Below are positions 15,901 to 55,283 of a stretch of DNA of 64,000 nucleotides, piece by piece. The notes under the pieces are model-generated. The model did no database searches. It saw only the letters and a program-made list of their open reading frames with translations, and was not told where the DNA came from. The first letter of the stretch is position 1. The number at the start of each line of letters is the position of its first letter. The translations under genes were made by a program, and so were the position numbers. The DNA is taken from positions 1-64,000 of the IMG/VR virus record IMGVR_UViG_3300047558_000137; one strand, given 5' to 3'.

Positions 15901-16047
15901 ACTTTAGTGTTTGGTAATTACTTCCAAATTAACGCAGAGCCGTGGGAAATCATTACTAGTGCGGCAACTGTAAATAACATAAACGTGGTATCTGCGGTAA
16001 CGGCAGCATACTTGAATTTAGGAAATACCCTAGTAGGAACACCATGA
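12940..16047 (+). CDS. gp6: Baseplate wedge subunit (gp6-like)
   Basis: DFTSYDFETLR, NDFIESSE, ARENFIDTAQRRDSILKLARMLSYNP, FGDG, QNRMITGEDY. Confidence 0.88.
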   Translation: MAQTTRQTNLLVQQDWTKIYQTFTNADFTSYDFETLRNSMINYLKTYYPETFNDFIESSEYLALIDMIAFLGQSLAFRTDLNARENFIDTAQRRDSILKLARMLSYNPGRTTAASGLLKINSIRTTESVYDSNGVNLANTTVNWNDLTNDNWLEQFTSVFNASLISTEMIGKPGNSQKLNGIQTEEYSIALNPNTLPVASFNVNIQGNPVAFEAVSATTVGKTYIYQEDPTIQGKFNVLYRNDNNGNGSNNTGFFLYFKQGTLNVTQFNITNAIPNNYVTVATNNITNEDQWLYALDVNGNPSVAWNKVPALPGYNVVFNNMSDKDLYQVNTRNNDQVDLIFGDGSFANVPQGKFKFYYRTSNGTTYSITPDDLSAVSIAFNYISKKNTPETLTVTASLNYTVNNANAAPSLSSIKSAAPQQYYTQNRMITGEDYNIFPQTTFSSIQKIKAINRTSSGVSLYLDAIDPTGSYSTTNIFGDDGVISANSDTKSTTFSFLTTNDVYSAIYNKVIPIIDSTEVKNYYYSTYQRYDSTHANVTFSQTGNTTVSSSGYLQYNNTTQQVGTGIAGNLRYVNTGATLRFFAPSGYHFNSQHEIMPGDPFDSGDTLSFYAAVSDVVSNSDVTTPSLVTFATVVPDGAILGDITEAGLNCIIPAYKNDLSTALINTLITQIKAKVNFGLKFDQVNQIWKNILPADIGSSTDWLLKFTYTQGYYTISYKSLSYSFTTNGSTKFYFDPATRVYNSTTGLNVIDTIKLLKINTKPSSAESLGEDVLWQIYNTITYPDGYVDDSTILVRSTESQLLGVPDNPDLYTTVADSASSRGDLYFQYKHNVPARNRVDPTPVNIVDLYILTSSYSADYINWLRDLTGTVTEPEPTTTGELEIEYGSLDSYKAVSDTIVYSPARFKPLFGDKAPSNLQAVFQVVKNPNVGLTDNEIKTQVVAEINKYFDPQNWDFGETFYFSELAAYLHAQLAPNISSVVIVPADHTLVFGNYFQINAEPWEIITSAATVNNINVVSAVTAAYLNLGNTLVGTP

Positions 16048-22000: not shown

Positions 22001-25000
22001 AGACCATTTTACTGGATCATTATCTGCTTTAGGGGCCGGAGATAAGATTTGGGTAGCAAAAGACACTGACCGAGGTTGGGACGTATTCCGTGTTAACGAA
22101 ACTGGAATCCATGCTACACAAATAAGTTATTCATTGAATGACTACGCACAAGTTAAATTTGATGCAGCACACTCATTTGTTGAAGATGACGCATTTGTAT
22201 TGAAATATTTCAATGATGCATTAGATGGTATATATCGTGTGGTAAACGTTGTAAACTCTACAACAGTAACAATTACAGTAACTGGTGCTGGTCGTAGTAA
22301 AGTTATTGTGGCCCCTGTAACGGGCAATGGTTCAATCTATTCATTAGATTCTGCACGATATCAAACTACACAAGAGTTCATTGATGCTCAAATTCCTCTA
22401 CATGGATGGAATAACAATGATCATATCTGGGTTGATCAAGCAACGTTCGATGGAACAAAGCAAGGGTGGGGTGTTTATACATTTAACAGACCATGGGCCG
22501 CTAACTTAGTAACACAAATAACTGCCAATACTGTTACAGGAAACGATCGTTTTGGTACAGCAGTATGCATTAGTACTGATTCTAAGTATGTTTATGTTGG
22601 TAATCCTGGTAACAAGAGTGTTCAAGTCTTTGCTAATGTAAACGGTACATTTGTTTCTAATGTAACGGTATCAAATGTTAATGCAAACTTTGGTAGCACG
22701 GTAGATAGTCAAGGCAATGTATTGGTAATCGGCAGTGGTAGTGATGCAAACGTTCACATATATCGTCACGCTAGCGGTACAGTGACTAAACTACAAACTA
22801 TTAACTCATCGAACGTATCTGCTGTTAGCAGTGTAACAGTAAGTTCGGATCTGCATTGGTTGTATGTTGGCGATGCAAATACTAATATTGTGGAAGCCTA
22901 TTATTCAAACAATGGCGGAACAACATACACCTGGGCCAATAAAATTACTGGCACTGCAAGTAGCAAATTTGGTAATGTAATTAAAACATCGAGTGATGGT
23001 GCTTTGCTATTTGTTGCTGCACCGAACGCAACCAATGTATATGCAAGAAATGGTAATGTTTATTATTATACAAGAACAGCTAATGCATTTGCATTAACAC
23101 AAACAATATCAAGTCAAAGTCAGAATGATTCTGCGTTGTTTGGGTATAGCATAGACATTGACTCAACAGGCGGCAATCTATTCATTGGTGCACCAGGAAG
23201 CACAGCATCAGGGTATCCTACTGGCGTAGTTGAAAGACATATACTTGGCGGCCTAGGCCAGTTTTATTATGACCAAACGTTTGAGCAACCCACAAACGAC
23301 ATAGGTCGAATGGGAACAAGTGTAAGTGTAAACAACAACTCAACACTACTGGCAGTAGGAAGTCAAGGTAGTGCCACTGATGAGCATACATATTTTGATG
23401 ATTACTTAACTATTATTGATTCTGATACAACAAAGTTTGTTGATGAAATATACAATAGTGGTGTTACATACATATATGAAAATATTATTGACCCATTTAT
23501 TACCAATGATAAAGGTCGATTTGTATTTGTACAAGAATTAGAAACTCAATTATATTCCGGAGATCAATTTGGCCAAGCAGTTGATGTTACAGATGGATTA
23601 ATTACAGTGGGAGCACCGGGGTCAAGTAATAATGCAGGTGCCTCATACATATTCTCAAACCCTACACACAGTACCGCATGGACAATTACTAGAAAACAAG
23701 AACCTAAAGTTGATATTAACAGTATCAGTCGATCATTTATCTATAACAAGAAGAATGATAACATTCTAGCGGCACTTGATTATATTGATCCAGCAAAAGG
23801 AAAGATATTAGATGCAGCCGATCGAGATATCGACTTCCGTACAACCAAAGATCCTGCACTATATAACAATGGTTCCCGCGGAATCCACGCCGATTTGCAC
23901 TGGAATGCTTCGCAAGTTGGTAAGATATGGTGGAATTTGGATACAATTCGCTTCATTGATTATGAACAAGATGCGTTAATCTATAGATTGACTAACTGGG
24001 GCAAACAATTCCCAGGAAGTACAGTTGATGTATACGAATGGGTTGAAAGCACAGTATTACCGAGCCAGTACACTGGTCCAGGTATTGCAGTTTATGCTGA
24101 TGACAGTGCATACAGTACCTACGGTTACGTAGATCAAAGCGGCAATGTTAAAGTAAAATATTATTTCTGGGTTAAAGAAAAAAATACAATCAATACTCGG
24201 GCCGGAAAACGTAACAGTGTATTAAGTATCGCGGCATCAATTGATAATCCACTTAGCCAAGGTATACCTTATGCTACTGTTTTACGCAATGACAGTGTAG
24301 CATTATATAATGTTAACAATGTATTAATGGGTCAAAATTCAGTATTGCATTTAGGTACTAAAGTTAGCGATGCGAATTTGATACATTCTGAATATAGATT
24401 AGTTGATGAGGGCGTGGGAACAAAACTCCCAACAAATATCGTTAATAAATTAATCGATAGTTTATCAGGAATTGACCAGGCTGGTAATCCTGTTCCTGAT
24501 CCAGCACTACCAGTAAGCCAACGGTACGGTATTAATGTTAGACCTCGTCAAACTATGGTAATCGATACTGCCGAAGCTCTATATAGCACAATATCGTTAA
24601 TCAATTTATATTTGTCTCAATACCCAGTAGTTAAACGTAAATCTTTAACTACATTAAACAGCAGTGAAGACATTCCAGCAGAAGATTCTGGCGATTACGA
24701 TTTAGCTGTTGAGACTAAAGATGAATTAGGTTATGTGAATACAGCGGGTCTAACAGCCGGATACCGAGTTTTAGTAACAACAGATAGTTCACAGTCAACT
24801 AAATGGGCAATTTACGAATATAACGGTACAGCGTTTGATACTACACCTGTAAGAGTACAGAGTTATAAAACTAACTTGTATTGGAATTATATTGACTGGT
24901 TTGATAGTTCATATGACCCAACCTCAATTCCAGATATAACAGTTAATACTCTATTAGATTTAGGTAAACTGACCTTAGTTGCAGGGCAATATATTAAAGT

Positions 25001-39155: not shown

Positions 39156-40032
39156 TGTAGCAGATTTAGATTGTATATACTTAACCTATGACGAGCCAAA
39201 GAAAGAAGAGTTTTGGGCAACTATTCAAAATATTGTTCCCTGGGCCAAGCGAGTGGACGGAGTTAAGGGCTCGGATGCGGCACATAAAGCGGCCGCTGAT
39301 GCAAGTGATACAGACCGGTTCATCCTCATTGACGGGGATAACCTCCCCGATCCTGCTTTCTTTAATCAACAGATGGTGTTGGATGACACTAACCGTGATT
39401 GCGTTTTCAGATGGCGGGCACGTAACAATATAAATGGATTAATGTATGGTAATGGCGGACTTAGCTCGTGGACTAAGGATTTTGTTTACAATATGCGGAC
39501 CCACGAGGCCACCGATGGGACTGCGGAGACGCTTGTGGAATTTTGCTTTCACCCAAAGTACTGGGCCATGGCCGACTGTTTTTCCACAACGTATCCTAAT
39601 GGAAGCCCCTTCCAAGCCTGGCGTGCGGGGTTTCGTGAAGGTGTTAAAATGTGCTTGGATCGTGGATCCCGCCCGAATCTCTTTGACTTTAAGAAGAGAG
39701 TGGTATCACGGAACTACGATAACTTATGCATCTGGCAGACAGTTGGGAAAGACGTGGGCAACGGGGCAATGGCTATATACGGTGCCAGACTGGGCACTTA
39801 TCTCACAATGCTTACAGAATGGGACTACACAGAAGTCCAAGACTTCTCCCGACTTGCAGAACTCTGGAAAGAACACCAAGATCAACAAAAGTTGAATATG
39901 TTTGAAATTACAGAAGCACTAACTACACGCCTAGGATTACCCATTGTAGAAATGTCAGCTGAGCAAAGCATATTTTTCAAACATCATTATCAAAGTCAGT
40001 TTAAAAATCGAGGCATAATGGTTCGCGAATGA
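39139..40032 (+). CDS. Glycosyltransferase-like protein
   Basis: LTYDEP, RVDGVKG, AHKAAA, FILIDGDN (DxD motif). Confidence 0.6.
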   Translation: MTEIVDVADLDCIYLTYDEPKKEEFWATIQNIVPWAKRVDGVKGSDAAHKAAADASDTDRFILIDGDNLPDPAFFNQQMVLDDTNRDCVFRWRARNNINGLMYGNGGLSSWTKDFVYNMRTHEATDGTAETLVEFCFHPKYWAMADCFSTTYPNGSPFQAWRAGFREGVKMCLDRGSRPNLFDFKKRVVSRNYDNLCIWQTVGKDVGNGAMAIYGARLGTYLTMLTEWDYTEVQDFSRLAELWKEHQDQQKLNMFEITEALTTRLGLPIVEMSAEQSIFFKHHYQSQFKNRGIMVRE

Positions 40033-40583
40033 ATACAGTAATTTGTTATTATCCTGGGTCGGGCGGACATAGATATAAAAACTTTTTAACTGACCAAGAA
40101 TATACAACCCCATCTAAAATTTACGATAATAATCAAAAAGATATTTACAATATTAGATATATAACCAACGACACTAAAGTAGTCAATTGTGACAAGACAA
40201 TATTGTTAACACATTGCATGAATAGTTCATTGATTAATGAAAAAATACCAAATAGTCGTATTATTAAAATAGTTGCAAATTTACAACTTAGTTTAGCCCG
40301 CGGGTGGGGCAATTTTTTTAAAGATCTAAAACAATTTGATAGCGATTTGGATAACGCATTTACTACAATTAAATGGCATCTTGAATATTACAATCAATAT
40401 CCAGCTGACATAACAGCAGATGAATTGGTACTAGTGGATATAGATTCAACAACATTTTGCCAAACAATGCGTAGTGAATTAACCAATTACAGCAATCAAA
40501 CATTTAATCGAGCATGGGAAATTTATTCTAAATTTGGCCCGCAAGCACCAGTACTGGATATAGAGCGTAATGAACAAAAGTGA
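40029..40583 (+). CDS. Hypothetical protein (weak sulfotransferase/P-loop-like start)
   Basis: YYPGSGG near the N-terminus; very AT-rich. Confidence 0.55.
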   Translation: MNTVICYYPGSGGHRYKNFLTDQEYTTPSKIYDNNQKDIYNIRYITNDTKVVNCDKTILLTHCMNSSLINEKIPNSRIIKIVANLQLSLARGWGNFFKDLKQFDSDLDNAFTTIKWHLEYYNQYPADITADELVLVDIDSTTFCQTMRSELTNYSNQTFNRAWEIYSKFGPQAPVLDIERNEQK

Positions 40584-41952
40584 TTTTATGGCTAATGCCG
40601 AATGGATGAAAGAGAATTTAGGCAAAGGTCTTTGTCTTGCCAAATGGCAGCAGGTAAGCCTACACTTGCCCACGGGATTAACTAACAGTTGTTATCACCC
40701 GCCACTACATCAGATTCCAGTGGAGCCACTAACAACTAATCCCAGCGCATTACATAACACTGAATATAAAAAAACACAGCGTGTTATAATGCTTAAAGAC
40801 GAGCGCCCGCAGGAATGTAGTTACTGCTGGACACAAGAAGATTTAGGTAATCTAAGCGACAGACATTATAGATCAGGAGAGCCCTGGGCAGCAGAACACT
40901 ATGAAGAAATCCGAAATTCTACAGGATCCGAGGATCCAACGCCTAGTTATGTGGAAGTCAATTTTAATCACGTCTGTAACCTTAAGTGTAGTTATTGCAG
41001 CCCTCAGTTTAGTAGTACTTGGTCTGACGAAGTTACCCGGTATGGTGGCTATCCAACTAGCACTACCCATAATGATCCTGGGCATTTTAAAGACGCTAGA
41101 CGACCTATCCCTGCTCGTGAAGCTAATCCATACGTGGACGCTTTTTGGGAGTGGTGGCCCGAGCTTTACCCTCGACTTAAACACTTCAGGATGACCGGCG
41201 GCGAGCCAATACTAGATCGGAACACATACAAGGTTTTTGATTATGTACTAGCCTTTCCTAAACCAGACCTGCATCTAAACGTTACCAGTAATTTCAGCGT
41301 AGAGCCTGCGATGTTTGACAAGTATCTTGACTATGTTAAACAGTTATGTGATACACAAATTGAACACTTCATGCAGTATGTTAGTCTTGATACTGGCATA
41401 GCAGAACATGCAGAGTATATTAGACACGGAATGTTCTTCAGGCGTGTCGCAACAAATGTTTTACGATATCTACAAGAAGCACCATATCGCAACAGTTTGA
41501 CGTTTATTATTACTATGAACAATCTAAGTGTTCTAGGAATTCAAAGGCAGCTAGAATGGATCTTAGAATTGAGAAAAGTATATAGTGAAACATACCAACG
41601 TGTTTGGTTTGATACGCCCTTACTACGCAGTCCAAGTTGGCAGAGTCTGCAGATCCTACCACCTGTGTATGCTGACCGTTTAGAGCAAGTTGCCAATTGG
41701 ATGGAGTTGCATAGGGAAACGCCAGATGAGCCATTTCAAGGGTTTAAGGACTATGAGATACAGCGTATGCGCCGTGATGTAGATTGGATGCGAGAAGGTA
41801 GCAAACTGGACCCTGAATATGTTAAACTACAACGTGCTGACTTTTATCGTTTCTTCAATGAACACGACAAGCGCAGACGCACAGATTTTTTAAAGACGTT
41901 CCCACAAATGAAAGAGTTCTGGGACGAATGTAGATACCATGCCCAAAATTAA
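40570..41952 (+). CDS. Twitch-domain radical SAM protein
   Basis: CLAKW...SCYH N-terminal module, CSYCW, CNLKCSYC, TGGEP. Confidence 0.88.
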   Translation: MNKSDFMANAEWMKENLGKGLCLAKWQQVSLHLPTGLTNSCYHPPLHQIPVEPLTTNPSALHNTEYKKTQRVIMLKDERPQECSYCWTQEDLGNLSDRHYRSGEPWAAEHYEEIRNSTGSEDPTPSYVEVNFNHVCNLKCSYCSPQFSSTWSDEVTRYGGYPTSTTHNDPGHFKDARRPIPAREANPYVDAFWEWWPELYPRLKHFRMTGGEPILDRNTYKVFDYVLAFPKPDLHLNVTSNFSVEPAMFDKYLDYVKQLCDTQIEHFMQYVSLDTGIAEHAEYIRHGMFFRRVATNVLRYLQEAPYRNSLTFIITMNNLSVLGIQRQLEWILELRKVYSETYQRVWFDTPLLRSPSWQSLQILPPVYADRLEQVANWMELHRETPDEPFQGFKDYEIQRMRRDVDWMREGSKLDPEYVKLQRADFYRFFNEHDKRRRTDFLKTFPQMKEFWDECRYHAQN

Positions 41953-43318: not shown

Positions 43319-44079
43319 AATCTCGATTTAAGAATTTAGTTGTATCTGGGTGCAGCTTTACCCACGAACCAATTAATGAATGGAATCCTTTTAGTTGGGC
43401 AAATACGTTTGGCCATTTAACTGATATGGTGGTACATAATCTTGCTATGCCCGGTGCCGGGAACGATCATATTTCAAAAAGTATAATTTTGTATATGGAA
43501 AGAAATTCATTTGATCCTGCTGATACGTTAGTATTAGTCATGTGGTCCGGAGTGGGAAGAATCGACTGGATTGCAGATAGATCTAAATCAAATTTTGGTG
43601 ACGAGTATCCGTTTACATATAACTATGATGATAACAATGAATTAGTTTTAGGTGGTAACTGGTGGAATAAAAAGAATCCAAGTCCATTAATAAAAACATT
43701 AATAAACTATTCTAAATATCAATCCGACAGCACGTTTGCATTGCACACTTGGTTGGCCATGCAAAATTTATCTAATTATCTAAAAGTAAACAATTTCGAA
43801 TATTACTACACATCATTCTTAAATTACAACAACACAAAAATCAAAGGTGATGCACTAACTGTCAACTTCTTTAAAGAGTTAGAAAATTTAAATCTATCAA
43901 TTGATTATAATCATTGGCTAGATTTTCAAGATGAAGAATACTATGGCGATTGGTCAAGAATACACAATTTTTTAGATGATGACGGCTTTCATCCTAGGTA
44001 TCCAAAAGCAACTGAAGGTTGGACTAAAGAAATTTTAATACCAAAATTAATTAAACTGGGAATTTTATATAACGTATGA
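43300..44079 (+). CDS. SGNH/GDSL-like hydrolase or acyltransferase
   Basis: VSGCSFT, NLAMPGAGND, DGFHP. Confidence 0.65.
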   Translation: MVQNTVKSRFKNLVVSGCSFTHEPINEWNPFSWANTFGHLTDMVVHNLAMPGAGNDHISKSIILYMERNSFDPADTLVLVMWSGVGRIDWIADRSKSNFGDEYPFTYNYDDNNELVLGGNWWNKKNPSPLIKTLINYSKYQSDSTFALHTWLAMQNLSNYLKVNNFEYYYTSFLNYNNTKIKGDALTVNFFKELENLNLSIDYNHWLDFQDEEYYGDWSRIHNFLDDDGFHPRYPKATEGWTKEILIPKLIKLGILYNV

Positions 44080-45410
44080 CAGATAAAACAGTAGCAGGAT
44101 TTTACGATAATGGGTACGATTACAATGCTCGTGCTCCTTATTTCATTGAGCGTGATCAACTAACTGATGACCAATGGAAAAAATTAACAGAAAGCAAAAC
44201 ATTTTGTATGATGCCATGGGTTCATATGCACGCCTTCCCAGATGGTCGTGCGTATCCTTGCTGTTTAGCAGACTACTGGCATCCCGTCGGCGACCTTCGT
44301 AAGAATACTATGAAGGAAATTTGGAACCAGGACAAGTATCGGCAGATCCGAGTAAACATGTTGGAGGATAAAGAGTGTATAGAATGCACTAAGTGTTATG
44401 AAAGAGAACAACACGGTGCGTTTAGTATGCGTAATGATGCCAATCGTAATTATGGGCAGTACATTAAAGAAGTAGAGTCAACGCTCGAAGATGGTACACA
44501 CCCAGAATTTAAGATTAGATACTGGGATGTTCGTTTTAGTAACCTTTGTAATTTTAGTTGCCGTAGTTGCGGTCCTATTTTTAGTAGCAATTGGTATAAT
44601 GATCACGTAAAGTTATACAACCGTAAACCTGATGTACTGGGCAGAGACATGTTGCGTGTAGAATATACCACAGGCGACGAAGATGACATGATTGCTCAAA
44701 TGATGCCGCATCTACCTTACTTGGAACAAGTTTACTTTGCTGGCGGTGAACCATTAATCATGAAGGAACACTACTTCATGTTAGAAAAGTTAATTGAGCT
44801 AGGTAAAACAGATATACGTTTACAGTACAATACAAATTTTAGTGAACTACGTTTCAAAGACAAACATGTGTTTGACTACTGGAAACATTTTAAAAATGTA
44901 AGTGTGGGCGCAAGCCTAGACGCATCGGGCGCCAGAGCAGAACTGATGCGTAAAGGAACTGATTGGCAGCAAACAGTAGACAATCGTAAACGCATGATGC
45001 AAGAAGTACCGCACGTAGACTTCTATATCAGTGCAACAGTAAGTTCAATGAATGTATTACACGTATTAGATTTCCATAAAGAATGGTGCGACTTGGGATT
45101 AATACAACCTAAAGATTTTAATATTAATATATGCCAGGATAGTAAGTGGTATCGTACTGACATATTTCCCTCATGGTTTAAAGAAGAAATTATAACTCCT
45201 GCTTACCAAGAGCACATTAAATGGCTAGAGCCACAAGACTCATTGTCTCGAGCAACCAACGGATTTAAGAGTGTATTGAGCTTTACTAACGCAACAGATA
45301 ACACCAGTGAATGGTCACGTTTTATTGAAGAAACAAGTAAGTTGGACAAAATTAGAAATGAAAACTTTTGGGATGTATTTCCTGAAATTAAAAAGGCCTT
45401 ATCAAAATGA
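44076..45410 (+). CDS. Twitch-domain radical SAM protein
   Basis: CMMPWVH...PCC, CNFSCRSC, AGGEP, YNTN. Confidence 0.9.
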   Translation: MTDKTVAGFYDNGYDYNARAPYFIERDQLTDDQWKKLTESKTFCMMPWVHMHAFPDGRAYPCCLADYWHPVGDLRKNTMKEIWNQDKYRQIRVNMLEDKECIECTKCYEREQHGAFSMRNDANRNYGQYIKEVESTLEDGTHPEFKIRYWDVRFSNLCNFSCRSCGPIFSSNWYNDHVKLYNRKPDVLGRDMLRVEYTTGDEDDMIAQMMPHLPYLEQVYFAGGEPLIMKEHYFMLEKLIELGKTDIRLQYNTNFSELRFKDKHVFDYWKHFKNVSVGASLDASGARAELMRKGTDWQQTVDNRKRMMQEVPHVDFYISATVSSMNVLHVLDFHKEWCDLGLIQPKDFNINICQDSKWYRTDIFPSWFKEEIITPAYQEHIKWLEPQDSLSRATNGFKSVLSFTNATDNTSEWSRFIEETSKLDKIRNENFWDVFPEIKKALSK

Positions 45411-47307: not shown

Positions 47308-48203
47308 TAGACCTGGTACTACGTCCCAATGAATTTACTAGTTTTACTTCTTTTTATCTAGAGCAGTTCTGGAGAAAGTTTTTTAACATATCATACTATG
47401 ATCCAACTAAAACATATGATAAGAATAGAACACTATTTGCAGTATGGTGGCAAACCGTAGATTCGGATCCCTGGCCAGCTCATATGAGAGATTTGGGCTA
47501 TAAGGTTGTGGTTGATAATATATGGGAAAGGCAACAGTTTCGTACAGATTACCATTGGATAGAACACAAATATTCAATGTGTTGGAATGAAAGTCTGTGG
47601 TGGGAAAGTCTAGGCTATGCTGATTATGTTCCACAAAGAAATTTAGAGTATCTTGCATTTATGCAGATGCGCTTGGCAAAGCCCGAGAGAGATAAGATAC
47701 ACAAAGAGCTTGATCCATTCTTAGATAGAATGTTATGGAGTTACTTAGCAAAGAATCAAACACTTGATGACGACACAGACGATAAGCTGTCGGGCCAACG
47801 ATATATGCATCCAAATTGGTACAACAAAACCTATTGCAGTATAGTAGTAGAAACCTATGTAAATGGCGGGCTACATGCGTCGGAGAAGACATATAAACCT
47901 ATAGCATACTATCACCCTTTTATGACTATAAGTGTTCCTGGTACACTGGCATTTTTAAAAGAGGCTGGGTTTGAAACATTTGATAATTTATTTGATGAAA
48001 GCTACGATAACATACATAATTTAGATTTACGATTAGATATTATAAAATCAAATTTGGAATCTATTAGATTAGATAAATCATATGATAAACTAACATTAGA
48101 TAAAATAGAATATAATCATAATAAATTTTTTAATAAACAAGAAACCTTAACATCAATGGAACAAGAAATAGTTAATCCATTATTAGAATATGCAGAAGCC
48201 TGA
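47304..48203 (+). CDS. Hypothetical protein, possibly GT-B-like glycan-related
   Basis: SIVVET...SEKTYKPI...GFETFDNLFDESYD C-terminal pattern. Confidence 0.55.
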   Translation: MIDLVLRPNEFTSFTSFYLEQFWRKFFNISYYDPTKTYDKNRTLFAVWWQTVDSDPWPAHMRDLGYKVVVDNIWERQQFRTDYHWIEHKYSMCWNESLWWESLGYADYVPQRNLEYLAFMQMRLAKPERDKIHKELDPFLDRMLWSYLAKNQTLDDDTDDKLSGQRYMHPNWYNKTYCSIVVETYVNGGLHASEKTYKPIAYYHPFMTISVPGTLAFLKEAGFETFDNLFDESYDNIHNLDLRLDIIKSNLESIRLDKSYDKLTLDKIEYNHNKFFNKQETLTSMEQEIVNPLLEYAEA

Positions 48204-49497
48204 TACACTATGCATGGCGCCGTGGACGCACACATACCTAAGCCCACAAACAGAACGTAGGATGTGTTGTGCCAGCCGAGAACCTGCACAAAACTTTCAG
48301 CAGTATATCGACACTAGCGCCGGCACCGGGCGATATATACCTATCACTTTGGATGAACACTGGAATGGAGAGCACATGAGGTCCGTGCGCCTACGTATGA
48401 TGCGTGGGGAAATCCTCCCAGAGTGCGAAGTATGTAATGATCGACTGTTGAATACTTCCGTTTACCGCAGTTATTTTAATCAACTGTTTGGTCATAAGTA
48501 CAATGAAGCAATGGCAAATACAGCCGAAGATGGTACGACTACATTGCAGCCAGTTAGTTGGGATTACCGTTTTAGTAATCTCTGTAACTTCAAATGTCGC
48601 ATGTGTGGGGACATGTTAAGCAGTGCTTGGGAGTCCGAGCAACGCCAACACAACATGATCAATTGGCACGATCCAAAGAACAATTGGATGAAGCCTGAGA
48701 TCAAAAAACAAATTGAAAGTTTTCAAGAAGGTCAAATAGAAGCCGAGTTCTCAAAGGCAGTTGAAGAACACAGAGTTGAAGAAGTATACTGGGTAGGTGG
48801 CGAGCCACTAATGTATGAACAACACTGGCGTTACATGGCTCGCATAGTTGAACTAGGAGATGGACCAAATGTTTACGCTCGTTATAACACCAACTTATCT
48901 CGCGTTAATTACAAGGGTATCAATTTGTATAGTGATATTCTTAGCCGGGTTCGTGACTGGCAAATATGCGCTTCAATTGATGGCACTGGGAAAATCGGGG
49001 AGTATATCAGAACCGGACTCGATTATGATCAATGGCTTAGAAACTTCCGTGCAGGAGTTGAGATCGCAACTCACAGACGTCAGATGCGAATTGACTTTAC
49101 ACTCACACTGCCAGGAATGTTCGAAGTTGAACGAATACAACAGCTCGCAGACAAGTTAAATGTAGACGTACTTGCTAAAGTAATTTTTAGTTTTAGCCCG
49201 GACATAGTTATGTCACCTTTAGCACTACCCAGAGAACTTCTAGATCCCTGGATAGACGAAACACTAAGAGAATTCGATTCAATTGGCACGAGCCCGTTAA
49301 AGGATATCCTTGTCCAGCTAAAAACTAGACCTACATTTGAAGAACAATGGCCCGACGAATACCGTACGGCTATTGCAAAAGGCAAAGCTCGTGTGTTAAA
49401 ATTAGAGCAAATACGTACACAGTCAATTACTATGACCGATATATTAAGTCAACGTCCGGACGTATTAGAATGGTGGATGAGCATTGAAACAATTTAA
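48190..49497 (+). CDS. Twitch-domain radical SAM protein
   Basis: CMAPWTH...MCC, CNFKCRMC, VGGEP, YNTN, ASIDG. Confidence 0.9.
   Translation: MQKPDTLCMAPWTHTYLSPQTERRMCCASREPAQNFQQYIDTSAGTGRYIPITLDEHWNGEHMRSVRLRMMRGEILPECEVCNDRLLNTSVYRSYFNQLFGHKYNEAMANTAEDGTTTLQPVSWDYRFSNLCNFKCRMCGDMLSSAWESEQRQHNMINWHDPKNNWMKPEIKKQIESFQEGQIEAEFSKAVEEHRVEEVYWVGGEPLMYEQHWRYMARIVELGDGPNVYARYNTNLSRVNYKGINLYSDILSRVRDWQICASIDGTGKIGEYIRTGLDYDQWLRNFRAGVEIATHRRQMRIDFTLTLPGMFEVERIQQLADKLNVDVLAKVIFSFSPDIVMSPLALPRELLDPWIDETLREFDSIGTSPLKDILVQLKTRPTFEEQWPDEYRTAIAKGKARVLKLEQIRTQSITMTDILSQRPDVLEWWMSIETI
48869..49159 (+). CDS. Putative nested +1-frame protein with N-terminal TM and coiled coil
   Basis: AGGAG 9 nt before ATG 48869; +1 stops are dense on both flanks and absent inside. 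Confidence 0.5.
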   Translation: MFTLVITPTYLALITRVSICIVIFLAGFVTGKYALQLMALGKSGSISEPDSIMINGLETSVQELRSQLTDVRCELTLHSHCQECSKLNEYNSSQTS

Positions 49498-49705
49498 AAT
49501 CAAAAACAGCATGATACCAGAAGTTACCCGATGGTGTCTGGAGAATTTAGGTAAAGAAAATATTCGTTGGTGGGTGTCACCTATTGGTACAGGTAACTGG
49601 AATGGTACCACATCAAAGTTTGAAAATGATATACAGTTGTTTATTGATGTTACTGAAGAAGAAGAAACCAACTTAACATATTTTGTTTTACGATATGATC
49701 AATAA
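49484..49705 (+). CDS. Hypothetical protein
   Basis: 73-aa ORF coupled to neighbours. Confidence 0.6.
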   Translation: MKQFKIKNSMIPEVTRWCLENLGKENIRWWVSPIGTGNWNGTTSKFENDIQLFIDVTEEEETNLTYFVLRYDQ

Positions 49706-50771
49706 AGTTATTGTTACACTACGTAACCCGCTGGCAAAAAATGAAACGTTAGACTACATAATTGAAGTAAACGATAGTCCAATGGGTTCTCGTTGGTACA
49801 TGGCCCTATATGATCTATTAAAGCAAAACCGGTATCTTGAAAAGAACTTTTGCTTTTTAGGTTTTCCTGACAGTGCCCGCGACCTAGAATATATTTGTCA
49901 AGAACTAGAATGGGCCGTTAAGCAGATTAATAGTTTCTTTGATCCCAGTGACTACTACATAGGACAGGCCTTTACGCCAGACAATCTGCGAGAAGGACTC
50001 GATCCTAATCAAGCGATGTTCAACGTATTGCACAATCACTTTGAGCACTTACAAGGTACAGTTTGGGGTCTAAGTGAATGGTACAAACGTGCCGACTATG
50101 AAACTAAGTTTGCCATTAGACAACTAAACAATCTATGTCACGAAGCAGAAAGCCTACTACTAAGTCAACGCAAACAGGTAGAAGCACCAGACTGGGTTAG
50201 ACCCAGTCAAATAACTACATTCTTAAATGCACAGCGATTGGAATTCCCCGATGAACTTAAAACGACTTTTGAAGAAACGAGATATGATCGTAAATTCGGT
50301 CAGGTATACTTACATTGGACCCAAATTGGGAAGACGCTATACGAGGTATTTAGAGATGAAGGGGGCGTGGCGGTGGATCAAGCCACTTGCGATGCTATTA
50401 CTCACTTACGATACTATTCGGGTGAATTTGATATTGAGTGGGCGCAGGACGTTGTCTATGGTGGACCGCATCCTTGGCACACCCGAGAAATTGATTTATT
50501 CAGATCTTGGCTTGAACAAAACAGATTCAACTTGGTGGACAGAAATTACAATTTTGGATATCACGCCGTCGGCCAAGTTAATCTTGCAGAGTCTTTTGGA
50601 ACAACCAACCACCGTGAAGTTTGGCCCATACTCTCTAGACACCTCGATATCTATAGCATACAAGCCGGCAGTGCCAAGTCAGTATACGACTATAACTGGA
50701 CAGACGTAGATTACTACCAACAACAAATAGAAAGATTGAAACCCGGATATGATTATAGTAGCAGGCGGTGA
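49695..50771 (+). CDS. Hypothetical protein
   Basis: About 358 aa; ATG 49695 preferred over TTG 49683. Confidence 0.75.
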   Translation: MINKVIVTLRNPLAKNETLDYIIEVNDSPMGSRWYMALYDLLKQNRYLEKNFCFLGFPDSARDLEYICQELEWAVKQINSFFDPSDYYIGQAFTPDNLREGLDPNQAMFNVLHNHFEHLQGTVWGLSEWYKRADYETKFAIRQLNNLCHEAESLLLSQRKQVEAPDWVRPSQITTFLNAQRLEFPDELKTTFEETRYDRKFGQVYLHWTQIGKTLYEVFRDEGGVAVDQATCDAITHLRYYSGEFDIEWAQDVVYGGPHPWHTREIDLFRSWLEQNRFNLVDRNYNFGYHAVGQVNLAESFGTTNHREVWPILSRHLDIYSIQAGSAKSVYDYNWTDVDYYQQQIERLKPGYDYSSRR

Positions 50772-51570
50772 TAGTTTTATATTTGGATCTGAATTAGCAG
50801 ATCAAACTGGTGCCCGCGCAAGCATGAATACTATTCCTGCCTTGCTTAGTAAAAGCATTGGGGCCGAATATACGTGTCTAGCAGTTCCCGGTAATGCCAA
50901 CAATGCTATTGCTAGACAGGTAATGGACTATTGCGAAACATACAAAGAAAATAAAATGTTTGTTTTTGTTATGTGGACATTTGTACACAGATACGATTTC
51001 AGATTCAATTACTCCACTGGGCGTAAAACAAGTCCCTGGCATAGCATAAACTTATGGGATATAGTAGACGATGTTGCAACACTTAAAAAAGAATTTGCAA
51101 ATCAAAATCAAAATGTTTTTGATGAATTAGTAAACGATAGATACCGAGCTGATTCAACTGGATTATCTGAGTTTTCTAAAATGTTTTACAAGCATGTTGG
51201 TAATAGTGAATACTATGAATTTTATACTAGTCTTAAAGAAATTGTGTTTTTGCAGAATTATCTAGACATAAACAATATACCATTTATGTTTACCTTTGCT
51301 GACATACATTTTAAAGACAGCGATCAAATTAAGCGTCATTTAACTGACCCCAGTATGCGTACACTTTACAATCAAATCAAGTGGGACCACTGGTATGAAT
51401 TTCCTGCAGGAACTAAAAAAGGCGAAACATTGGATCCAAGAGGTTTTTATCAGTGGGCTGTGGAGAATAAATATCAAGTAGGCACTACACATCCGCTAGA
51501 ACAAGCACACGCAGATGCTGCCCAATTAATGCAGGAAAAATTCAATGAAATGGTTAAAAAATCTCTATAA
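50749..51570 (+). CDS. SGNH/GDSL-like hydrolase or acyltransferase
   Basis: GGDSFIFG, AVPGNAN, THP. Confidence 0.65.
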   Translation: MIIVAGGDSFIFGSELADQTGARASMNTIPALLSKSIGAEYTCLAVPGNANNAIARQVMDYCETYKENKMFVFVMWTFVHRYDFRFNYSTGRKTSPWHSINLWDIVDDVATLKKEFANQNQNVFDELVNDRYRADSTGLSEFSKMFYKHVGNSEYYEFYTSLKEIVFLQNYLDINNIPFMFTFADIHFKDSDQIKRHLTDPSMRTLYNQIKWDHWYEFPAGTKKGETLDPRGFYQWAVENKYQVGTTHPLEQAHADAAQLMQEKFNEMVKKSL

Positions 51571-51646: not shown

Positions 51647-52305
51647 TTAAACACATACTAACTGTCGGCGACAGTTTTACCTACGGGGAAGAACTTGAAA
51701 ACAGAGACAATGCATATCCCTATTATCTTGCTAAAGGGTTAAAAGCTGAAGTAGTTAATCTTGGACAGCCTAGTGGTGGTAATCGTCAAATGGTACGCAA
51801 AGTAATAGATTATGTTCTAAGTGGTGAACCGTTAGATCTAGTAATCATTGGGTGGACAAGTCCCGGGCGTATAGAGTTTGCAGATGCCAATGGTGTGTTT
51901 GATATATGGCCCGGCTACGGGGGAGACCTGTTTAGACGTGACGGGCAAGAGTGGCGACTAGAATTACTAGACTACATTAACAAGCATCACGATCCAGAAT
52001 ATCTATATAGACAACATCTTAACGATATTATTCTGTTACAGAGTTTTTTACAACAGCGTAACATACGTTATCTAATGTTAAAGGTAGTTGGTAATGAGTA
52101 TTATCACAATACCTACTACAATGAAGATGCAGTATTGCCTAAACAAATTGATGCAACACACTTTGTGGGATGGCCCAATCAAGGGATGGCAGAATGGACA
52201 AACGGATGTCGACGTGGACCACGTGGGCATTTTCTCGAAGAAGGTCACAGAAAGGTGACAGCAAAACTTTATGAACATATTAGGAATCTCGGCTGGCTTT
52301 CATGA
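51643..52305 (+). CDS. SGNH/GDSL-like hydrolase or acyltransferase
   Basis: VGDSFTYG, NLGQPSGGN, GHF. Confidence 0.7.
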   Translation: MIKHILTVGDSFTYGEELENRDNAYPYYLAKGLKAEVVNLGQPSGGNRQMVRKVIDYVLSGEPLDLVIIGWTSPGRIEFADANGVFDIWPGYGGDLFRRDGQEWRLELLDYINKHHDPEYLYRQHLNDIILLQSFLQQRNIRYLMLKVVGNEYYHNTYYNEDAVLPKQIDATHFVGWPNQGMAEWTNGCRRGPRGHFLEEGHRKVTAKLYEHIRNLGWLS

Positions 52306-53761
52306 TGCAGCCGCAACAGTATTAGACGATGATGGGAACATCTTATTTGCCTCACACAGCGAGCGTTACAGTAAGCAGAAGTCTGATGCTAATTTTTGCA
52401 GCCCTCTTATTCGTGAGCTTGAGCAGTACAATCCAATTGGAACCGCAGCCTACTATGAGCGCCCATTGGTTAAACAGCTACGACAGCTTTATGCAGGACA
52501 GGGATTTGAATGGAACAAACTATCTACAAAGAAGTTGGTACATGATCAAATTGGTTATGCCAAGTGGTGGGACCTTAGCAAGTACAGAAGTTTCAACCAC
52601 CATCTTAGTCATGCAGCCGCTGGATTCCAGACTAGCAGTTTTGATAGGGCAACGGTCGTTGTAATCGATGCAATAGGTGAATTTGAAACAGTAACCATAT
52701 GGGGTGCAGAATATGATAGCACAGGTCGAGCAGTTTATAAAAAGTTGTGGCAACGCAATTACCCGCATAGCATTGGACTCTTTTACACTGGAGCTACTAA
52801 GCGGGTTGGCCTTAAGCCACTAGACGAAGAATACATTCTAATGGGCATGGCCGCCTATGGCAACCGCGGATTCAGCGATTTACTAAAGATGGACTTAATT
52901 GACAATGAATGGGAAATTAAATTCAAACAGAATATGCACACAGGGCTAACATTAAAGTATCTAAATGATGCAACAGCAGATTTTGATGTAGCAGCCGCGG
53001 CCCAAGATCTAGTAGAAGATTTAATACTTAACGTTATGCTTAGAGCCAAACAGTTTAAGTGGAGTGACAATTTAGTTTACATGGGCGGGTGCGCCCTTAA
53101 TTGTAGTGCCAATGCACGTATAGGAGCTTACTTTGATAATATATGGATTATGCCTAATCCTGGTGACGCTGGTAGCAGCCTTGGTGCTGCCGCTTTGGCT
53201 TATGGGCGTAGAATTAACTGGACCAGTGCTTATCTCGGGCATAATATTCCTGGCAATTATCCCGTTATGGAGCTTTTGGATAGGCTACTTGCTGAACAGA
53301 TTGTGGGAGTGGCAAGTGGACGTGCCGAATTCGGCCCCCGCGCACTCGGAAACCGTAGCCTCCTTGCGGACCCTCGAGGCAGCGAGATTAAGGAGAGAGT
53401 AAATGACATTAAACGTAGGCAACAGTTCAGACCCTTTGCGCCAGTTATTTTGGAAGAGTTGGCTGACACTTACTTTGATATGCCTCGCGGTTGGGGTAAC
53501 AGTAGGTATATGCAAACAGTCGCTCGTTGTAGGTTTCCTGACCTATTTCCTGCTATCGTTCATCATGACGGCACTAGTCGTGTACAAACTGTGCCGCGTG
53601 ATGGATCGGGAATACGAGAGCTGTTAGAACGATGGTTTGTAATGACTGACTGCCCTATGCTGCTCAATACAAGCCTGAACATACGTGGCGAACCAATGGT
53701 TAATGATCGTGCAGATGCAGATCGATTTGAAAAATTATATGGTATAAAGGTCTGCTCATGA
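52271..53761 (+). CDS. Carbamoyltransferase (NodU/CmcH family)
   Basis: GFHDAAA, HSERY, HHLSHAAAG, GDAGSSLGAA, GRAEFGPRALGNRSLLADP, RPFAP, LLNTSLN. Confidence 0.93.
   Translation: MNILGISAGFHDAAATVLDDDGNILFASHSERYSKQKSDANFCSPLIRELEQYNPIGTAAYYERPLVKQLRQLYAGQGFEWNKLSTKKLVHDQIGYAKWWDLSKYRSFNHHLSHAAAGFQTSSFDRATVVVIDAIGEFETVTIWGAEYDSTGRAVYKKLWQRNYPHSIGLFYTGATKRVGLKPLDEEYILMGMAAYGNRGFSDLLKMDLIDNEWEIKFKQNMHTGLTLKYLNDATADFDVAAAAQDLVEDLILNVMLRAKQFKWSDNLVYMGGCALNCSANARIGAYFDNIWIMPNPGDAGSSLGAAALAYGRRINWTSAYLGHNIPGNYPVMELLDRLLAEQIVGVASGRAEFGPRALGNRSLLADPRGSEIKERVNDIKRRQQFRPFAPVILEELADTYFDMPRGWGNSRYMQTVARCRFPDLFPAIVHHDGTSRVQTVPRDGSGIRELLERWFVMTDCPMLLNTSLNIRGEPMVNDRADADRFEKLYGIKVCS
53133..53402 (+). CDS. 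Putative nested +1-frame 89-aa two-TM protein in the carbamoyltransferase gene
   Basis: AGGAG 6 nt before TTG; two hydrophobic helices. Confidence 0.55.
   Translation: MIIYGLCLILVTLVAALVLPLWLMGVELTGPVLISGIIFLAIIPLWSFWIGYLLNRLWEWQVDVPNSAPAHSETVASLRTLEAARLRRE
53403..53627 (+). CDS. Putative nested +1-frame 74-aa two-TM protein in the carbamoyltransferase gene
   Basis: TAAGGAG 7 nt before ATG; TAA-ATG junction with the preceding nested ORF. Confidence 0.6.
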   Translation: MTLNVGNSSDPLRQLFWKSWLTLTLICLAVGVTVGICKQSLVVGFLTYFLLSFIMTALVVYKLCRVMDREYESC

Positions 53762-54486
53762 CGCAAACTAGATGGGATTACACTACGTCCCAAAGTAAAT
53801 GGCATTTTAATACACACGCATCATCTGCGCCCGGTGTTGATAATTTTATACATGTTTGCAGATTTAATGCAGATTTTCCAGAGGCATGTACCTTAGCCGA
53901 AGGTGGATTAAAACCAAATAACTGGAGCACAGGGGTGCTTCGTCCTTGGCTTAAAAATCAAGAAGTCGGGCCGGATCAAGCAGACTTAGTACGTGCAGGA
54001 GCCGACCCTAATGGCGAAATATACGACAGGGCACCAGCAGATCATGTACCATTGTTTTGTGCTATATCGGACTATCTTGGAATGGAAAAGCCTATCATTA
54101 AATATCATGTTCAACGTACAGGACAATATGTAGTTACACATATAGATGATTTTTTTCAAACTGGATTCAATCGTTGGAATTGGTTAGAACGCAATAGAGG
54201 TGAGCCGTTAACAGAACCAAGAGATGTAAAAATAAGAAGATTTGCAATTATGTTAGATGATTGGAAATTAGGACAAATATTTCAAGTTGGTACAGCAAAC
54301 TGGCACCAATGGCGTGCGGGAGATTGCATTACATGGGATTGGTATAATACACCGCACTCTACAGCAAATCTAGGATGGGCGCCTCGCCATATGTTACAAA
54401 TCACAGGTGCAGAAACACTGCGTACACAAGAAGTATTAGCACAAGCTAATATCAACAAAATTATAGATATAAAGGAACTGTTATGA
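53758..54486 (+). CDS. Cupin / 2OG-Fe(II) oxygenase-like protein
   Basis: HIDD (HxD) and PHSTANLG...RHMLQITG. Confidence 0.55.
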   Translation: MTQTRWDYTTSQSKWHFNTHASSAPGVDNFIHVCRFNADFPEACTLAEGGLKPNNWSTGVLRPWLKNQEVGPDQADLVRAGADPNGEIYDRAPADHVPLFCAISDYLGMEKPIIKYHVQRTGQYVVTHIDDFFQTGFNRWNWLERNRGEPLTEPRDVKIRRFAIMLDDWKLGQIFQVGTANWHQWRAGDCITWDWYNTPHSTANLGWAPRHMLQITGAETLRTQEVLAQANINKIIDIKELL

Positions 54487-55283
54487 AAACGCCACAACGT
54501 ATTCTTATTATGGGCTTACCCGGTGCAGGTAAGACTTACTTAGCACAGCACATACTAGATCATTTACAGGCTGAGAAAAAACGTGTAGGTTGGTTAAACG
54601 CTGACGATGTACGTAAGAAGTATAACGATTGGGACTTTAGTGTTGATGGTCGCATACGTCAAAGTCATCGTATGCGTGAACTAGCAGACTCAATGGCGGA
54701 TATGGATTATGTGATCTGTGACTTTGTTGCACCACTAGTGGAAATGCGTAACAACTTTAAAGCAGATTGGACTGTTTGGGTAGACACGATTGATAAGGGA
54801 CGGTTTGAAGATACAAACAAGGCCTTTATTGCTCCTGATATCTACGACTTTAGAGTAACAGAACAGAGATCAGAGTGGTGGGGCGAATTTATTGCCGCAC
54901 ACATACTAGACAATCGCAGACGTCCTGTGTTCGATTGGCAAAAGGAAACAGTACAGATGTTAGGACGTTGGCAACCTTGGCATGCCGGTCATCGTGCATT
55001 GTTTGAACGTGCTATTGCCAAGACTGGACAGGTAGTAATTCAAATACGTGACTGCCAAGGTTGGCAAGGATCAAACCCATTTGCTATCGAACAGGTTAAG
55101 AGCTTTATTCGTAGAGACTTGGATCCCATCTATCAAGGACAGTATGAAATCCAAGTGGTGCCCAACATTGTAAACATTACCTATGGTCGAGATGTGGGCT
55201 ACAAGATAGAGCAAGAAATGTTTGATGAATCAATTACAGATATCTCTGCAACAAAGATTCGTCGGAGCATGGGTCTTGAGTGA
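54483..55283 (+). CDS. Adenylylsulfate-kinase-like domain fused to a nucleotidyltransferase domain
   Basis: GLPGAGKT, LNADDVR, then GRWQPWHAGH (HxGH). Confidence 0.8.
   Translation: MKTPQRILIMGLPGAGKTYLAQHILDHLQAEKKRVGWLNADDVRKKYNDWDFSVDGRIRQSHRMRELADSMADMDYVICDFVAPLVEMRNNFKADWTVWVDTIDKGRFEDTNKAFIAPDIYDFRVTEQRSEWWGEFIAAHILDNRRRPVFDWQKETVQMLGRWQPWHAGHRALFERAIAKTGQVVIQIRDCQGWQGSNPFAIEQVKSFIRRDLDPIYQGQYEIQVVPNIVNITYGRDVGYKIEQEMFDESITDISATKIRRSMGLE

What the first reader, a model, noticed from the sequence alone, without database searches (positions are those of the whole stretch)
50227..50709. Longest nested +1 ORF (160 codons) in the 49695 hypothetical gene
The frame opens at a TAA-ATG junction (50227) and has a second start with GAGGT 8 nt before ATG 50356 (117 aa, MKGAWRWIKPLAMLLL...). 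By hand count, all nine NTA host codons in the patch are followed by C/T and none of five NTG codons is followed by A, while the flanks have frequent +1 stops. The product is mostly soluble, so not every nested gene is a membrane protein. Selecting the longest open stretch biases this count.
Basis: partly seen in the sequence, partly recalled or inferred. Interest (0 to 1): 0.6.

Follow-up and report, generated by a model that had tools for sequence, protein, structure and literature searches.

The report
Conserved hidden gene inside phage gene
A 160-codon reading frame hidden in the +1 frame of a conserved jumbo-phage gene is kept free of stop codons in this phage and in a whole branch of related lake phages, so it is a strong but still untranslated-on-paper candidate for a second, newly evolved protein gene written over an older one.

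Summary

It is far beyond chance. Synonymous shuffles expect 8.7 stops in the patch (5.9 when only the patch is shuffled) against 0 observed. The longest shuffled frame was 144 codons in 20,000 trials. The ORF is the top outlier in the window and second of 632 tests in the 374-kb phage genome.

Among 101 distinct orthologues, a 27-member clade keeps the same frame open for 139-175 codons in 24 members, although synonymous sites are saturated. In the 5' half, observed stops equal expected stops everywhere. Deep orthologues show no depletion in the patch.

In the open clade the overlap shows 24% fewer host-synonymous changes and 45% more host amino-acid changes.

The best reading is an overprinted, same-strand nested gene for a basic (pI about 10) protein with no relatives and no confident fold.

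Weak points: the start codon and ribosome-binding site are not conserved, a dNN/dNS test was not significant, no expression data were available, and the window's closest relatives by host-protein identity (73-75%) carry stops. A 92%-identical copy does keep the ORF.

The parts
49695..50771 (+). Host gene: 358-aa conserved protein of unknown function. No Pfam or PHROG family. Confident AlphaFold model, cyclophilin-like barrel with a helical insert.
   Evidence: 3775 homologues; pLDDT 86, pTM 0.85
50224..50226 (+). TAA in the +1 frame that opens the nested frame. It is made by host codons Leu-Asn (TTA AAT) and is present in nearly all orthologues.
50227..50709 (+). Nested +1 ORF: 160 codons plus TAG stop at 50707-50709. 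The predicted product is basic (pI 9.9), contains no Cys, and has no relatives outside this locus.
50227..50229 (+). First candidate start ATG. It has no SD-like motif. An ATG at this position is shared by part of the clade.
50284..50286 (+). Candidate start ATG from host codons Tyr-Asp (TAT GAT). It is the ATG position most widely shared with orthologues outside the clade. It would give a 141-aa product.
50343..50347 (+). GAGGT, SD-like, 8 nt before ATG 50356. The spacing resembles the AGGA motifs of this phage's other genes.
50356..50358 (+). Candidate internal start ATG (117-aa product). It is not conserved in the clade, where most sequences have Thr here.
50749..51570 (+). Downstream gene, 273 aa, with an N-terminal GDS motif that looks SGNH/GDSL-like. 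It overlaps the host gene's last 23 nt and is in the same frame as the nested ORF. Three +1 stops (50707, 50728, 50737) separate it from the nested ORF.

Best explanation
A second protein-coding gene has been overprinted on the 3' half of an older, conserved jumbo-phage gene. It lies on the same strand in the +1 frame and is fully nested.

Shown:
- The frame is kept free of stop codons by selection in this phage's lineage and in a 27-member clade of related freshwater phages.
- The overlapped stretch evolves as dual-coding DNA does, with fewer host-synonymous and more host amino-acid changes.
- A few host-synonymous sites are frozen in the clade: His207 CAT, Ile211 ATT, Cys232 TGT and Glu244 GAG.

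Inferred:
- The mRNA of the host gene is also read by ribosomes that start internally. In the window this would be at one of ATG 50227, 50251, 50284 or 50356. In the clade it would be at an ATG made by host Tyr/His-Glu at codons 182-183.
- The product is a 14-19 kDa basic protein (pI about 10), predicted helical in its first half and poorly ordered overall, with no relatives elsewhere. That profile is typical of young de novo proteins.
- Its weak sequence constraint together with strong stop avoidance suggests a young gene whose length and composition matter more than an exact fold. Its cellular role is unknown.
- A stop-free core over host codons 183-265 is seen in a wider set of orthologues. 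This suggests a shorter ORF that was later extended in the 3' direction.
For: - Length and stop depletion. The ORF is an outlier window-wide and genome-wide.
- Orthologues: 23 of 101 distinct sequences have 0 patch stops where 3-8 are expected, and 6 more have a single 3'-terminal stop. The 5' half gives 1284 observed against 1303 expected, so the null model is calibrated. Deep groups show no depletion, with ratios of 0.94-0.95.
- Clade structure: 24 of 27 members of one clade are open. The clade is also recovered from the non-overlapped half of the protein alone.
- Independence: synonymous sites inside the clade are saturated in many pairs (dS above 1, or not computable), so open frames in different sublineages are effectively independent.
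- Dual-coding signature by Fitch counts on the tree: host-synonymous changes in patch versus 5' half are 0.80 in the clade and 1.05 outside it. The ratio of ratios is 0.76 (bootstrap CI 0.68-0.85). Amino-acid changes are 1.45x (CI 1.22-1.73). The two curves coincide up to about codon 160 and separate from about codon 171 onward.
- Frozen synonymous sites occur only in the patch: 3 of 52 against 0 of 81.
- A 92%-identical relative keeps all 160 codons. The patch is the most conserved stretch of that locus, at 96.5% nt identity against 89% for the rest of the gene and about 75% for the neighbours.
- At equal host identity, the window's nested product is closer to the clade's products (39%) than to the +1 translations of non-open orthologues (32.5%). 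There is no such difference in the 5' half.
- A profile of the nested proteins finds nothing in 1.84 billion proteins except calls of this same locus.
Against: - There is no expression or peptide evidence.
- No start codon or SD-like motif is conserved across the clade. The window's GAGGT-ATG 50356 is lineage-specific.
- An OLGenie-style dNN/dNS for the nested frame was 0.87 (CI 0.69-1.10). That is no lower than the control regions at 0.77-0.99.
- The excess of codon homozygosity at conserved host residues is weak overall (p 0.09).
- AlphaFold gives no confident fold for the nested protein (pLDDT 42.7).
- The window's place in the tree is unresolved. Its nearest relatives at 73-75% host identity carry +1 stops, so the window's ORF may be a separate gain rather than an inheritance from the clade. 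An AU test does not reject a single clade (p 0.69).
- The high identity to the 92% relative could be recombination mosaicism, since other patches of that locus are equally conserved.
Confidence: 0.68

Rival explanations
1. Chance open frame plus inheritance. The frame lost its stops by accident in an ancestor, descendants still show this, and nothing is translated.
For: Thousands of homologues exist, so some lineage will reach zero stops by chance at about e^-6. The nested-frame dNN/dNS is not below controls. The nested protein has no confident fold.
Against: Synonymous sites within the clade are saturated, so an unselected frame would have regained about 3-8 stops in every sublineage. Instead 24 of 27 remain open, each with p between <0.0005 and 0.13 under the strict within-patch shuffle. 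The 5' half and the deep orthologues match the null model. The overlap shows a reduced synonymous rate. The ORF is second of 632 tests genome-wide.
Confidence: 0.1
2. The +1 frame is translated but the peptide does not matter. It acts as a long upstream reading frame that delivers or couples ribosomes to the next gene. That gene is in the same frame, and in most clade members it starts 9 nt after the nested stop.
For: The nested ORF is in the same frame as the downstream gene 50749. In many clade members the nested stop (host TTA AAG read as TAA) lies three codons before the downstream ATG. The pattern of strong stop avoidance with weak amino-acid constraint fits this idea.
Against: Ribosomes on the host frame already pass over that ATG and terminate 20 nt later, so extra coupling seems unnecessary. 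In the L014/L073/L133 subgroup the downstream gene is a different one, yet the ORF is kept. In the window itself the nested ORF ends 40 nt and three stops before the ATG. A few nested residues look fixed.
Confidence: 0.1
3. Programmed +1 (or -2) ribosomal frameshift. The open frame is the alternative C-terminal half of a fusion protein that begins with the host gene's first ~180 residues, so it needs no start codon.
For: No start codon or SD-like motif is conserved. The open frame begins directly after a +1 stop that is fixed by the host protein sequence.
Against: No conserved slippery or pausing motif was seen just after the +1 stop. Nearly every open sequence has an ATG within the first 5 codons, or at codon 20. 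The only host-nested chimeras in the protein library are a deletion and a reversed frame switch in single contigs, which look like assembly or indel artefacts.
Confidence: 0.07
4. A non-coding constraint on the RNA or DNA of this stretch (structure, binding site or packaging signal) lowers synonymous change and removes stops as a by-product.
For: The synonymous rate is reduced in the patch. The patch is highly conserved against the 92% relative.
Against: Such a constraint has no reason to remove stops from one frame only over 480 nt. The +2 frame of the same stretch carries many stops. The synonymous reduction is diffuse over the whole patch rather than focal. Promoter and terminator scans are at chance level.
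Confidence: 0.05

Closest known systems
Phage lambda Rz/Rz1 (embedded o-spanin gene in the +1 frame of the i-spanin gene); from my own knowledge of the literature
   Same: Tailed dsDNA phage; same strand; the smaller gene lies wholly inside the larger one in the +1 frame; it has its own internal start.
   Different: Rz1 is a short lipoprotein with a signal peptide and lipobox Cys, and Rz is a membrane-anchored protein. Here the nested product has no Cys at all and no signal-like N-terminus, the host protein is a globular cyclophilin-like barrel, and the overlap is about 2.5 times longer. It is not a spanin pair.
Overprinted genes of small viruses (phiX174 E in D, B in A, K; tombusvirus p19 in p22); reviews PMC8227390, PMC3494269, PMC11044054
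   Same: A de novo protein born in an alternative frame of an older gene. The young protein is restricted to a sub-lineage, compositionally biased and poorly ordered. The host frame shows lowered synonymous change.
   Different: Those occur in tiny genomes where coding space is limiting, and they are experimentally proven. This one sits in a 374-kb genome with no obvious pressure to compress, and it rests on comparative evidence only.
Same-strand nested ORFs in bacteria, e.g. GndA inside E. coli gnd (PMC11230408), and long overlapping ORFs in Pseudomonas and E. coli (PMC8850804, PMC9927249)
   Same: An alternative-frame ORF inside an annotated gene that annotation pipelines systematically discard. 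It was detected here by ORF-length randomisation as in PMC6188560.
   Different: GndA is 36 aa, and most bacterial cases are antisense. Here the ORF is 160-175 codons, in the sense direction, and supported by many diverged orthologues rather than by ribosome profiling.

Membership tests
Overprinted (same-strand nested) protein-coding overlapping gene | Alternative-frame ORF significantly longer than expected from the host gene's protein sequence and codon usage | tested here: met
   160 codons against a mean of 52 and a maximum of 144 in 20,000 synonymous shuffles. The within-patch shuffle expects 5.9 stops against 0 observed. z is 7.7 in the window and 8.5 (rank 2 of 632) in the genome.
Overprinted (same-strand nested) protein-coding overlapping gene | ORF kept open in diverged orthologues beyond what ancestry explains | tested here: met
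   24 of 27 members of one clade, plus L005/L085, L114/L116 and the 92% relative, are open for 135-175 codons. Synonymous sites are saturated. In the 5' half observed equals expected, and deep orthologues are not depleted.
Overprinted (same-strand nested) protein-coding overlapping gene | Reduced synonymous substitution in the host frame across the overlap | tested here: met
   Patch/5'-half ratio is 0.80 in the open clade and 1.05 elsewhere. Ratio of ratios 0.76 (CI 0.68-0.85). Host amino-acid changes are 1.45x. The effect is modest.
Overprinted (same-strand nested) protein-coding overlapping gene | Purifying selection on the nested amino-acid sequence (nested dN/dS below 1) | tested here: inconclusive
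   OLGenie-style dNN/dNS is 0.87 (CI 0.69-1.10) against 0.77-0.99 in control regions. Four frozen host-synonymous sites occur in the patch only.
Overprinted (same-strand nested) protein-coding overlapping gene | Own translation start with a ribosome-binding site | tested here: inconclusive
   ATG codons lie near the 5' end in nearly all open sequences, but at varying positions and without a conserved SD-like motif. The window has GAGGT 8 nt before ATG 50356 only. About half of this phage's ordinary genes also lack an SD-like motif.
Overprinted (same-strand nested) protein-coding overlapping gene | Product detected (ribosome footprints, peptides) | not testable with these tools
No proteomic data are on hand.
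Rz/Rz1-type embedded spanin pair | Nested product is a lipoprotein (signal sequence plus lipobox Cys) and the host product is a membrane-anchored i-spanin | tested here: not met
   The window's nested product has no Cys and a charged N-terminus. The host protein is a confidently folded globular protein without a hydrophobic anchor.
Programmed ribosomal frameshift product | Conserved slippery or pause site at the frame junction and absence of an independent start | tested here: inconclusive
   No conserved shift motif was seen after the +1 stop by inspecting the codon alignment, and ATGs are present near the 5' end. No dedicated motif search or junction-peptide data were available.

The most novel reading that the evidence does not exclude
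This gene family records the stepwise birth of a de novo gene in a giant phage genome. Deep orthologues have a +1 frame with the expected number of stops. A wider middle group has a stop-free core over host codons 183-265. One clade and the window's lineage have extended it to 160-175 codons, possibly more than once independently, while a few members are losing it again. If so, it would be a densely sampled natural time series of overprinting in a 374-kb genome where space saving cannot be the driver.
Probability: 0.3. Interest if true: 0.75.

Novelty: new member of a known kind. Interest (0 to 1): 0.6.

Why it matters
Long same-strand nested genes are routinely discarded by phage annotation and are thought to be a device of tiny genomes. 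A selected 480-nt nested frame in a 374-kb phage would show that overprinting also creates genes where coding space is not limiting.

With thousands of metagenomic orthologues at different stages, the family is a tractable system for studying how a de novo protein is born, extended and lost. It also flags a conserved but unannotated phage protein. A second candidate of the same strength lies elsewhere in the same genome.

Tried and rejected
- Phage GenBank collection, DNA and protein searches: no match for the host gene.
- Pfam and PHROGs: nothing for the host or nested protein.
- AlphaFold of the nested protein with 23 homologous frames: pLDDT 42.7, so no usable model and no fold search.
- Host model, Foldseek against PDB: nothing. 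VIA-wide gave cyclophilin-like hits at Z 8-9, which is borderline. The Atlas searches by shape and by features gave no lead.
- Profile of nested proteins against 1.84 billion proteins: only the same locus and two repetitive giants.
- OLGenie-style estimator: the controls are themselves below 1, so it does not discriminate.
- Pairwise NG86 dS: noisy and often saturated. It was replaced by tree-based counts.
- Promoter/terminator scan inside the host gene: chance level.
- Two further AU tests, for larger unions of open lineages, did not finish in time.
- Membrane-protein idea: the central hydrophobic stretch reaches 1.3-2.1 on a 19-residue scale in some members but carries charges in the L017 subgroup, so it was rejected as a conserved helix.
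- Spanin idea: rejected (see membership test).
- Literature search for nested genes in jumbo phages: no report found.

Full report
**Context.** The window is the first 64 kb of a 374,314-bp virus record classed as complete. It carries baseplate-like genes, a 3753-aa ORF, at least three radical-SAM/SPASM genes, a carbamoyltransferase and an APS-kinase-like gene.

The gene at 49695..50771 encodes a 358-aa protein with no Pfam or PHROG family. It has 3775 homologues of about 357 aa in metagenomes, many on contigs of 100-360 kb. The loci fetched come largely from lake metagenomes. AlphaFold models the protein confidently over its whole length, including the overlapped half (pLDDT 86, pTM 0.85). 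Structural search gives only borderline cyclophilin-like barrel matches with a helical insert (Z 8-9; Foldseek found nothing). The host reading frame is therefore certainly a real gene.

**The observation.** The +1 ORF 50227..50709 exists exactly as described.
- It starts at an ATG that directly follows a +1-frame TAA.
- GAGGT lies 8 nt before ATG 50356.
- All 9 NTA host codons in the patch are followed by C/T and all 5 NTG codons by G.
- Upstream, 14 of 22 NTA codons and 1 of 7 NTG codons make stops.
- +1 stops number 15 in the 177 codons before the patch, 0 in its 160 codons, and 3 in the 21 codons after it.

**Chance.** I kept the host protein sequence and shuffled synonymous codons, in the spirit of the randomisation test of PMC6188560.
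- The longest +1 run has mean 52 and maximum 144 in 20,000 shuffles.
- 8.7 stops are expected in the patch, and no shuffle had none.
- Shuffling only within the patch, which preserves its own codon make-up, still expects 5.9 stops (p < 1/2000).
In the window this ORF has z 7.7 and the next has 4.4.
- In the whole genome (316 crude genes, two sense frames) it ranks second at z 8.5, behind one ORF outside the window. All others are at 5.5 or below.

**Orthologues.** I collected 52 IMG/VR and 80 metagenome loci, which gave 101 distinct full-length orthologues. For each one I counted +1 stops and compared them with its own shuffles.
- In the 5' half, observed equals expected throughout (1284 against 1303), so the null model is calibrated.
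- In the patch, 23 sequences have no stop where 3-8 are expected.
- Six more have one stop close to the 3' end.
- The most distant groups have as many stops as expected, with ratios of 0.94-0.95.

On the protein tree, 24 of the open sequences fall in one clade of 27. That clade is also recovered from the non-overlapped half of the protein alone. Within this clade many pairs have dS above 1 or beyond estimation in the 5' half, and the fraction of identical codons at identical residues is near its floor. An unselected frame would therefore have regained stops in each sublineage. The frame is instead open for 139-175 codons between the same two host-encoded stops. Three members (L032, L011, L028) carry 2-4 stops and look like losses.

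**Dual-coding signature.** I made Fitch counts of codon and amino-acid changes per alignment column on the tree.
- In the open clade, host-synonymous changes in the patch are 0.80 of those in the 5' half.
- In the other 69 sequences the ratio is 1.05.
- The ratio of ratios is 0.76 (bootstrap CI 0.68-0.85).
- Host amino-acid changes are raised 1.45-fold (CI 1.22-1.73).
- In sliding windows the two groups track each other closely up to about codon 160. From about codon 171 to the end of the gene, the open clade is lower in every window.
- Four host-synonymous sites are frozen or nearly frozen in the clade but free elsewhere: His207 CAT, Ile211 ATT, Cys232 TGT and Glu244 GAG. No such site exists among 81 comparable sites in the 5' half.
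- The overall excess of codon homozygosity is weak (p 0.09). An OLGenie-style dNN/dNS for the nested frame (0.87, CI 0.69-1.10) is not below the controls.
- Selection against stops is therefore strong, while selection on the amino-acid sequence is weak to moderate.

**The window's own lineage.**
- A Logan contig 92% identical in the host protein keeps all 160 codons. Over the patch the two differ at 17 nt (96.5% identity), against about 89% in the middle of the gene and about 75% in the neighbouring genes. The locus is mosaic, so this is only suggestive.
- The window sits on a long branch in an unresolved part of the tree.
- Its nearest relatives at 73-75% host identity carry stops at host codons 182, 266 and 317.
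- An AU test does not reject a tree that joins the window to the open clade (p 0.69).
- At equal host identity, the window's nested product is more like the clade's products (39%) than like the +1 translations of non-open orthologues (32.5%). About half of that gap is simply the stops. There is no such difference in the 5' half.
- Whether the window inherited the gene or opened the frame independently remains open.
- The first 83 codons of the patch (host codons 183-265) are also stop-free in several non-clade groups (0-0.4 observed against about 2 expected). This hints at an older, shorter ORF that was later extended.

**The product.** The predicted proteins have these features.
- They are 135-175 aa long and basic (pI 9.5-11.2).
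- They have a moderately hydrophobic central stretch that is not conserved as a membrane helix.
- AlphaFold predicts helices in the first half but with low confidence (pLDDT 42.7).
- They have no Pfam or PHROG match.
- A profile search of 1.84 billion proteins finds only gene calls of this same locus. These include two frame-shifted chimeras that look like indel artefacts.

This fits a de novo origin.

**The start.**
- In the clade, an ATG formed by host Tyr/His-Glu at codons 182-183 is nearly universal.
- The window has Leu (TTG) there and uses other ATGs: 50227, 50251, 50284 and 50356.
- No SD-like motif is conserved. About half of this phage's ordinary genes also lack one.

**Relation to the next gene.** The nested frame is the frame of the downstream SGNH-like gene 50749. 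In most clade members the nested stop lies three codons before that gene's ATG. This allows a rival reading in which translation of the frame serves coupling rather than a protein. Against it, the ORF is kept in a subgroup with a different downstream gene, and in the window it ends 40 nt earlier.

**Verdict.** The most likely explanation (about 0.68) is a genuine overprinted nested gene, a new member of a known kind. It remains unproven at the level of translation.

Noticed in passing
G000:C1:274846-276018 (minus strand; outside the window): The only gene in the 374-kb genome with a more extreme +1 ORF than the one studied: 115 codons against a shuffle mean of 37 and maximum of 60, z 9.8. It is a second nested-gene candidate.
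   Followed up: no
window 52329..52664, 48860..49159, 39446..39895: Weaker +1 ORFs lie inside the carbamoyltransferase gene (111 aa, z about 4), the radical-SAM gene 48190 (99 aa, p < 0.003) and gene 39139 (149 aa, p 0.013). None approaches the 49695 case.
   Followed up: partly
window 50707..50751 and loci L010, L017, L022, L064, L106, L111: The nested ORF shares its frame with the downstream gene 50749..51570. In many relatives its stop lies 9 nt before that gene's ATG. The host gene's last 23 nt overlap the downstream gene.
   Followed up: partly
window 40570..41952, 44076..45410, 48190..49497, 52271..53761, 54483..55283: A run of three radical-SAM/SPASM genes, a carbamoyltransferase and an APS-kinase-like P-loop gene surrounds the host gene, next to two GDSL/SGNH-like genes. 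It looks like a modification or biosynthesis cluster of unknown product.
   Followed up: no
window 49695..50771 (host protein): The host protein has invariant Cys53, Cys68, Cys148-His149, Cys232, His113 and His207 across 30 diverse homologues. Its model is a cyclophilin-like barrel with a four-helix insert and has no Foldseek match. It may be a metal-binding enzyme of a new family.
   Followed up: partly
P0122, P0124 (protein library): Two database proteins are chimeras that switch between the host frame and the nested frame, one through a deletion of about 30 codons plus 1 nt. They are probably indel or assembly artefacts in single contigs.
   Followed up: partly
window 16044..27305: A single 3753-aa ORF follows the baseplate-like genes. 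It was not examined.
   Followed up: no
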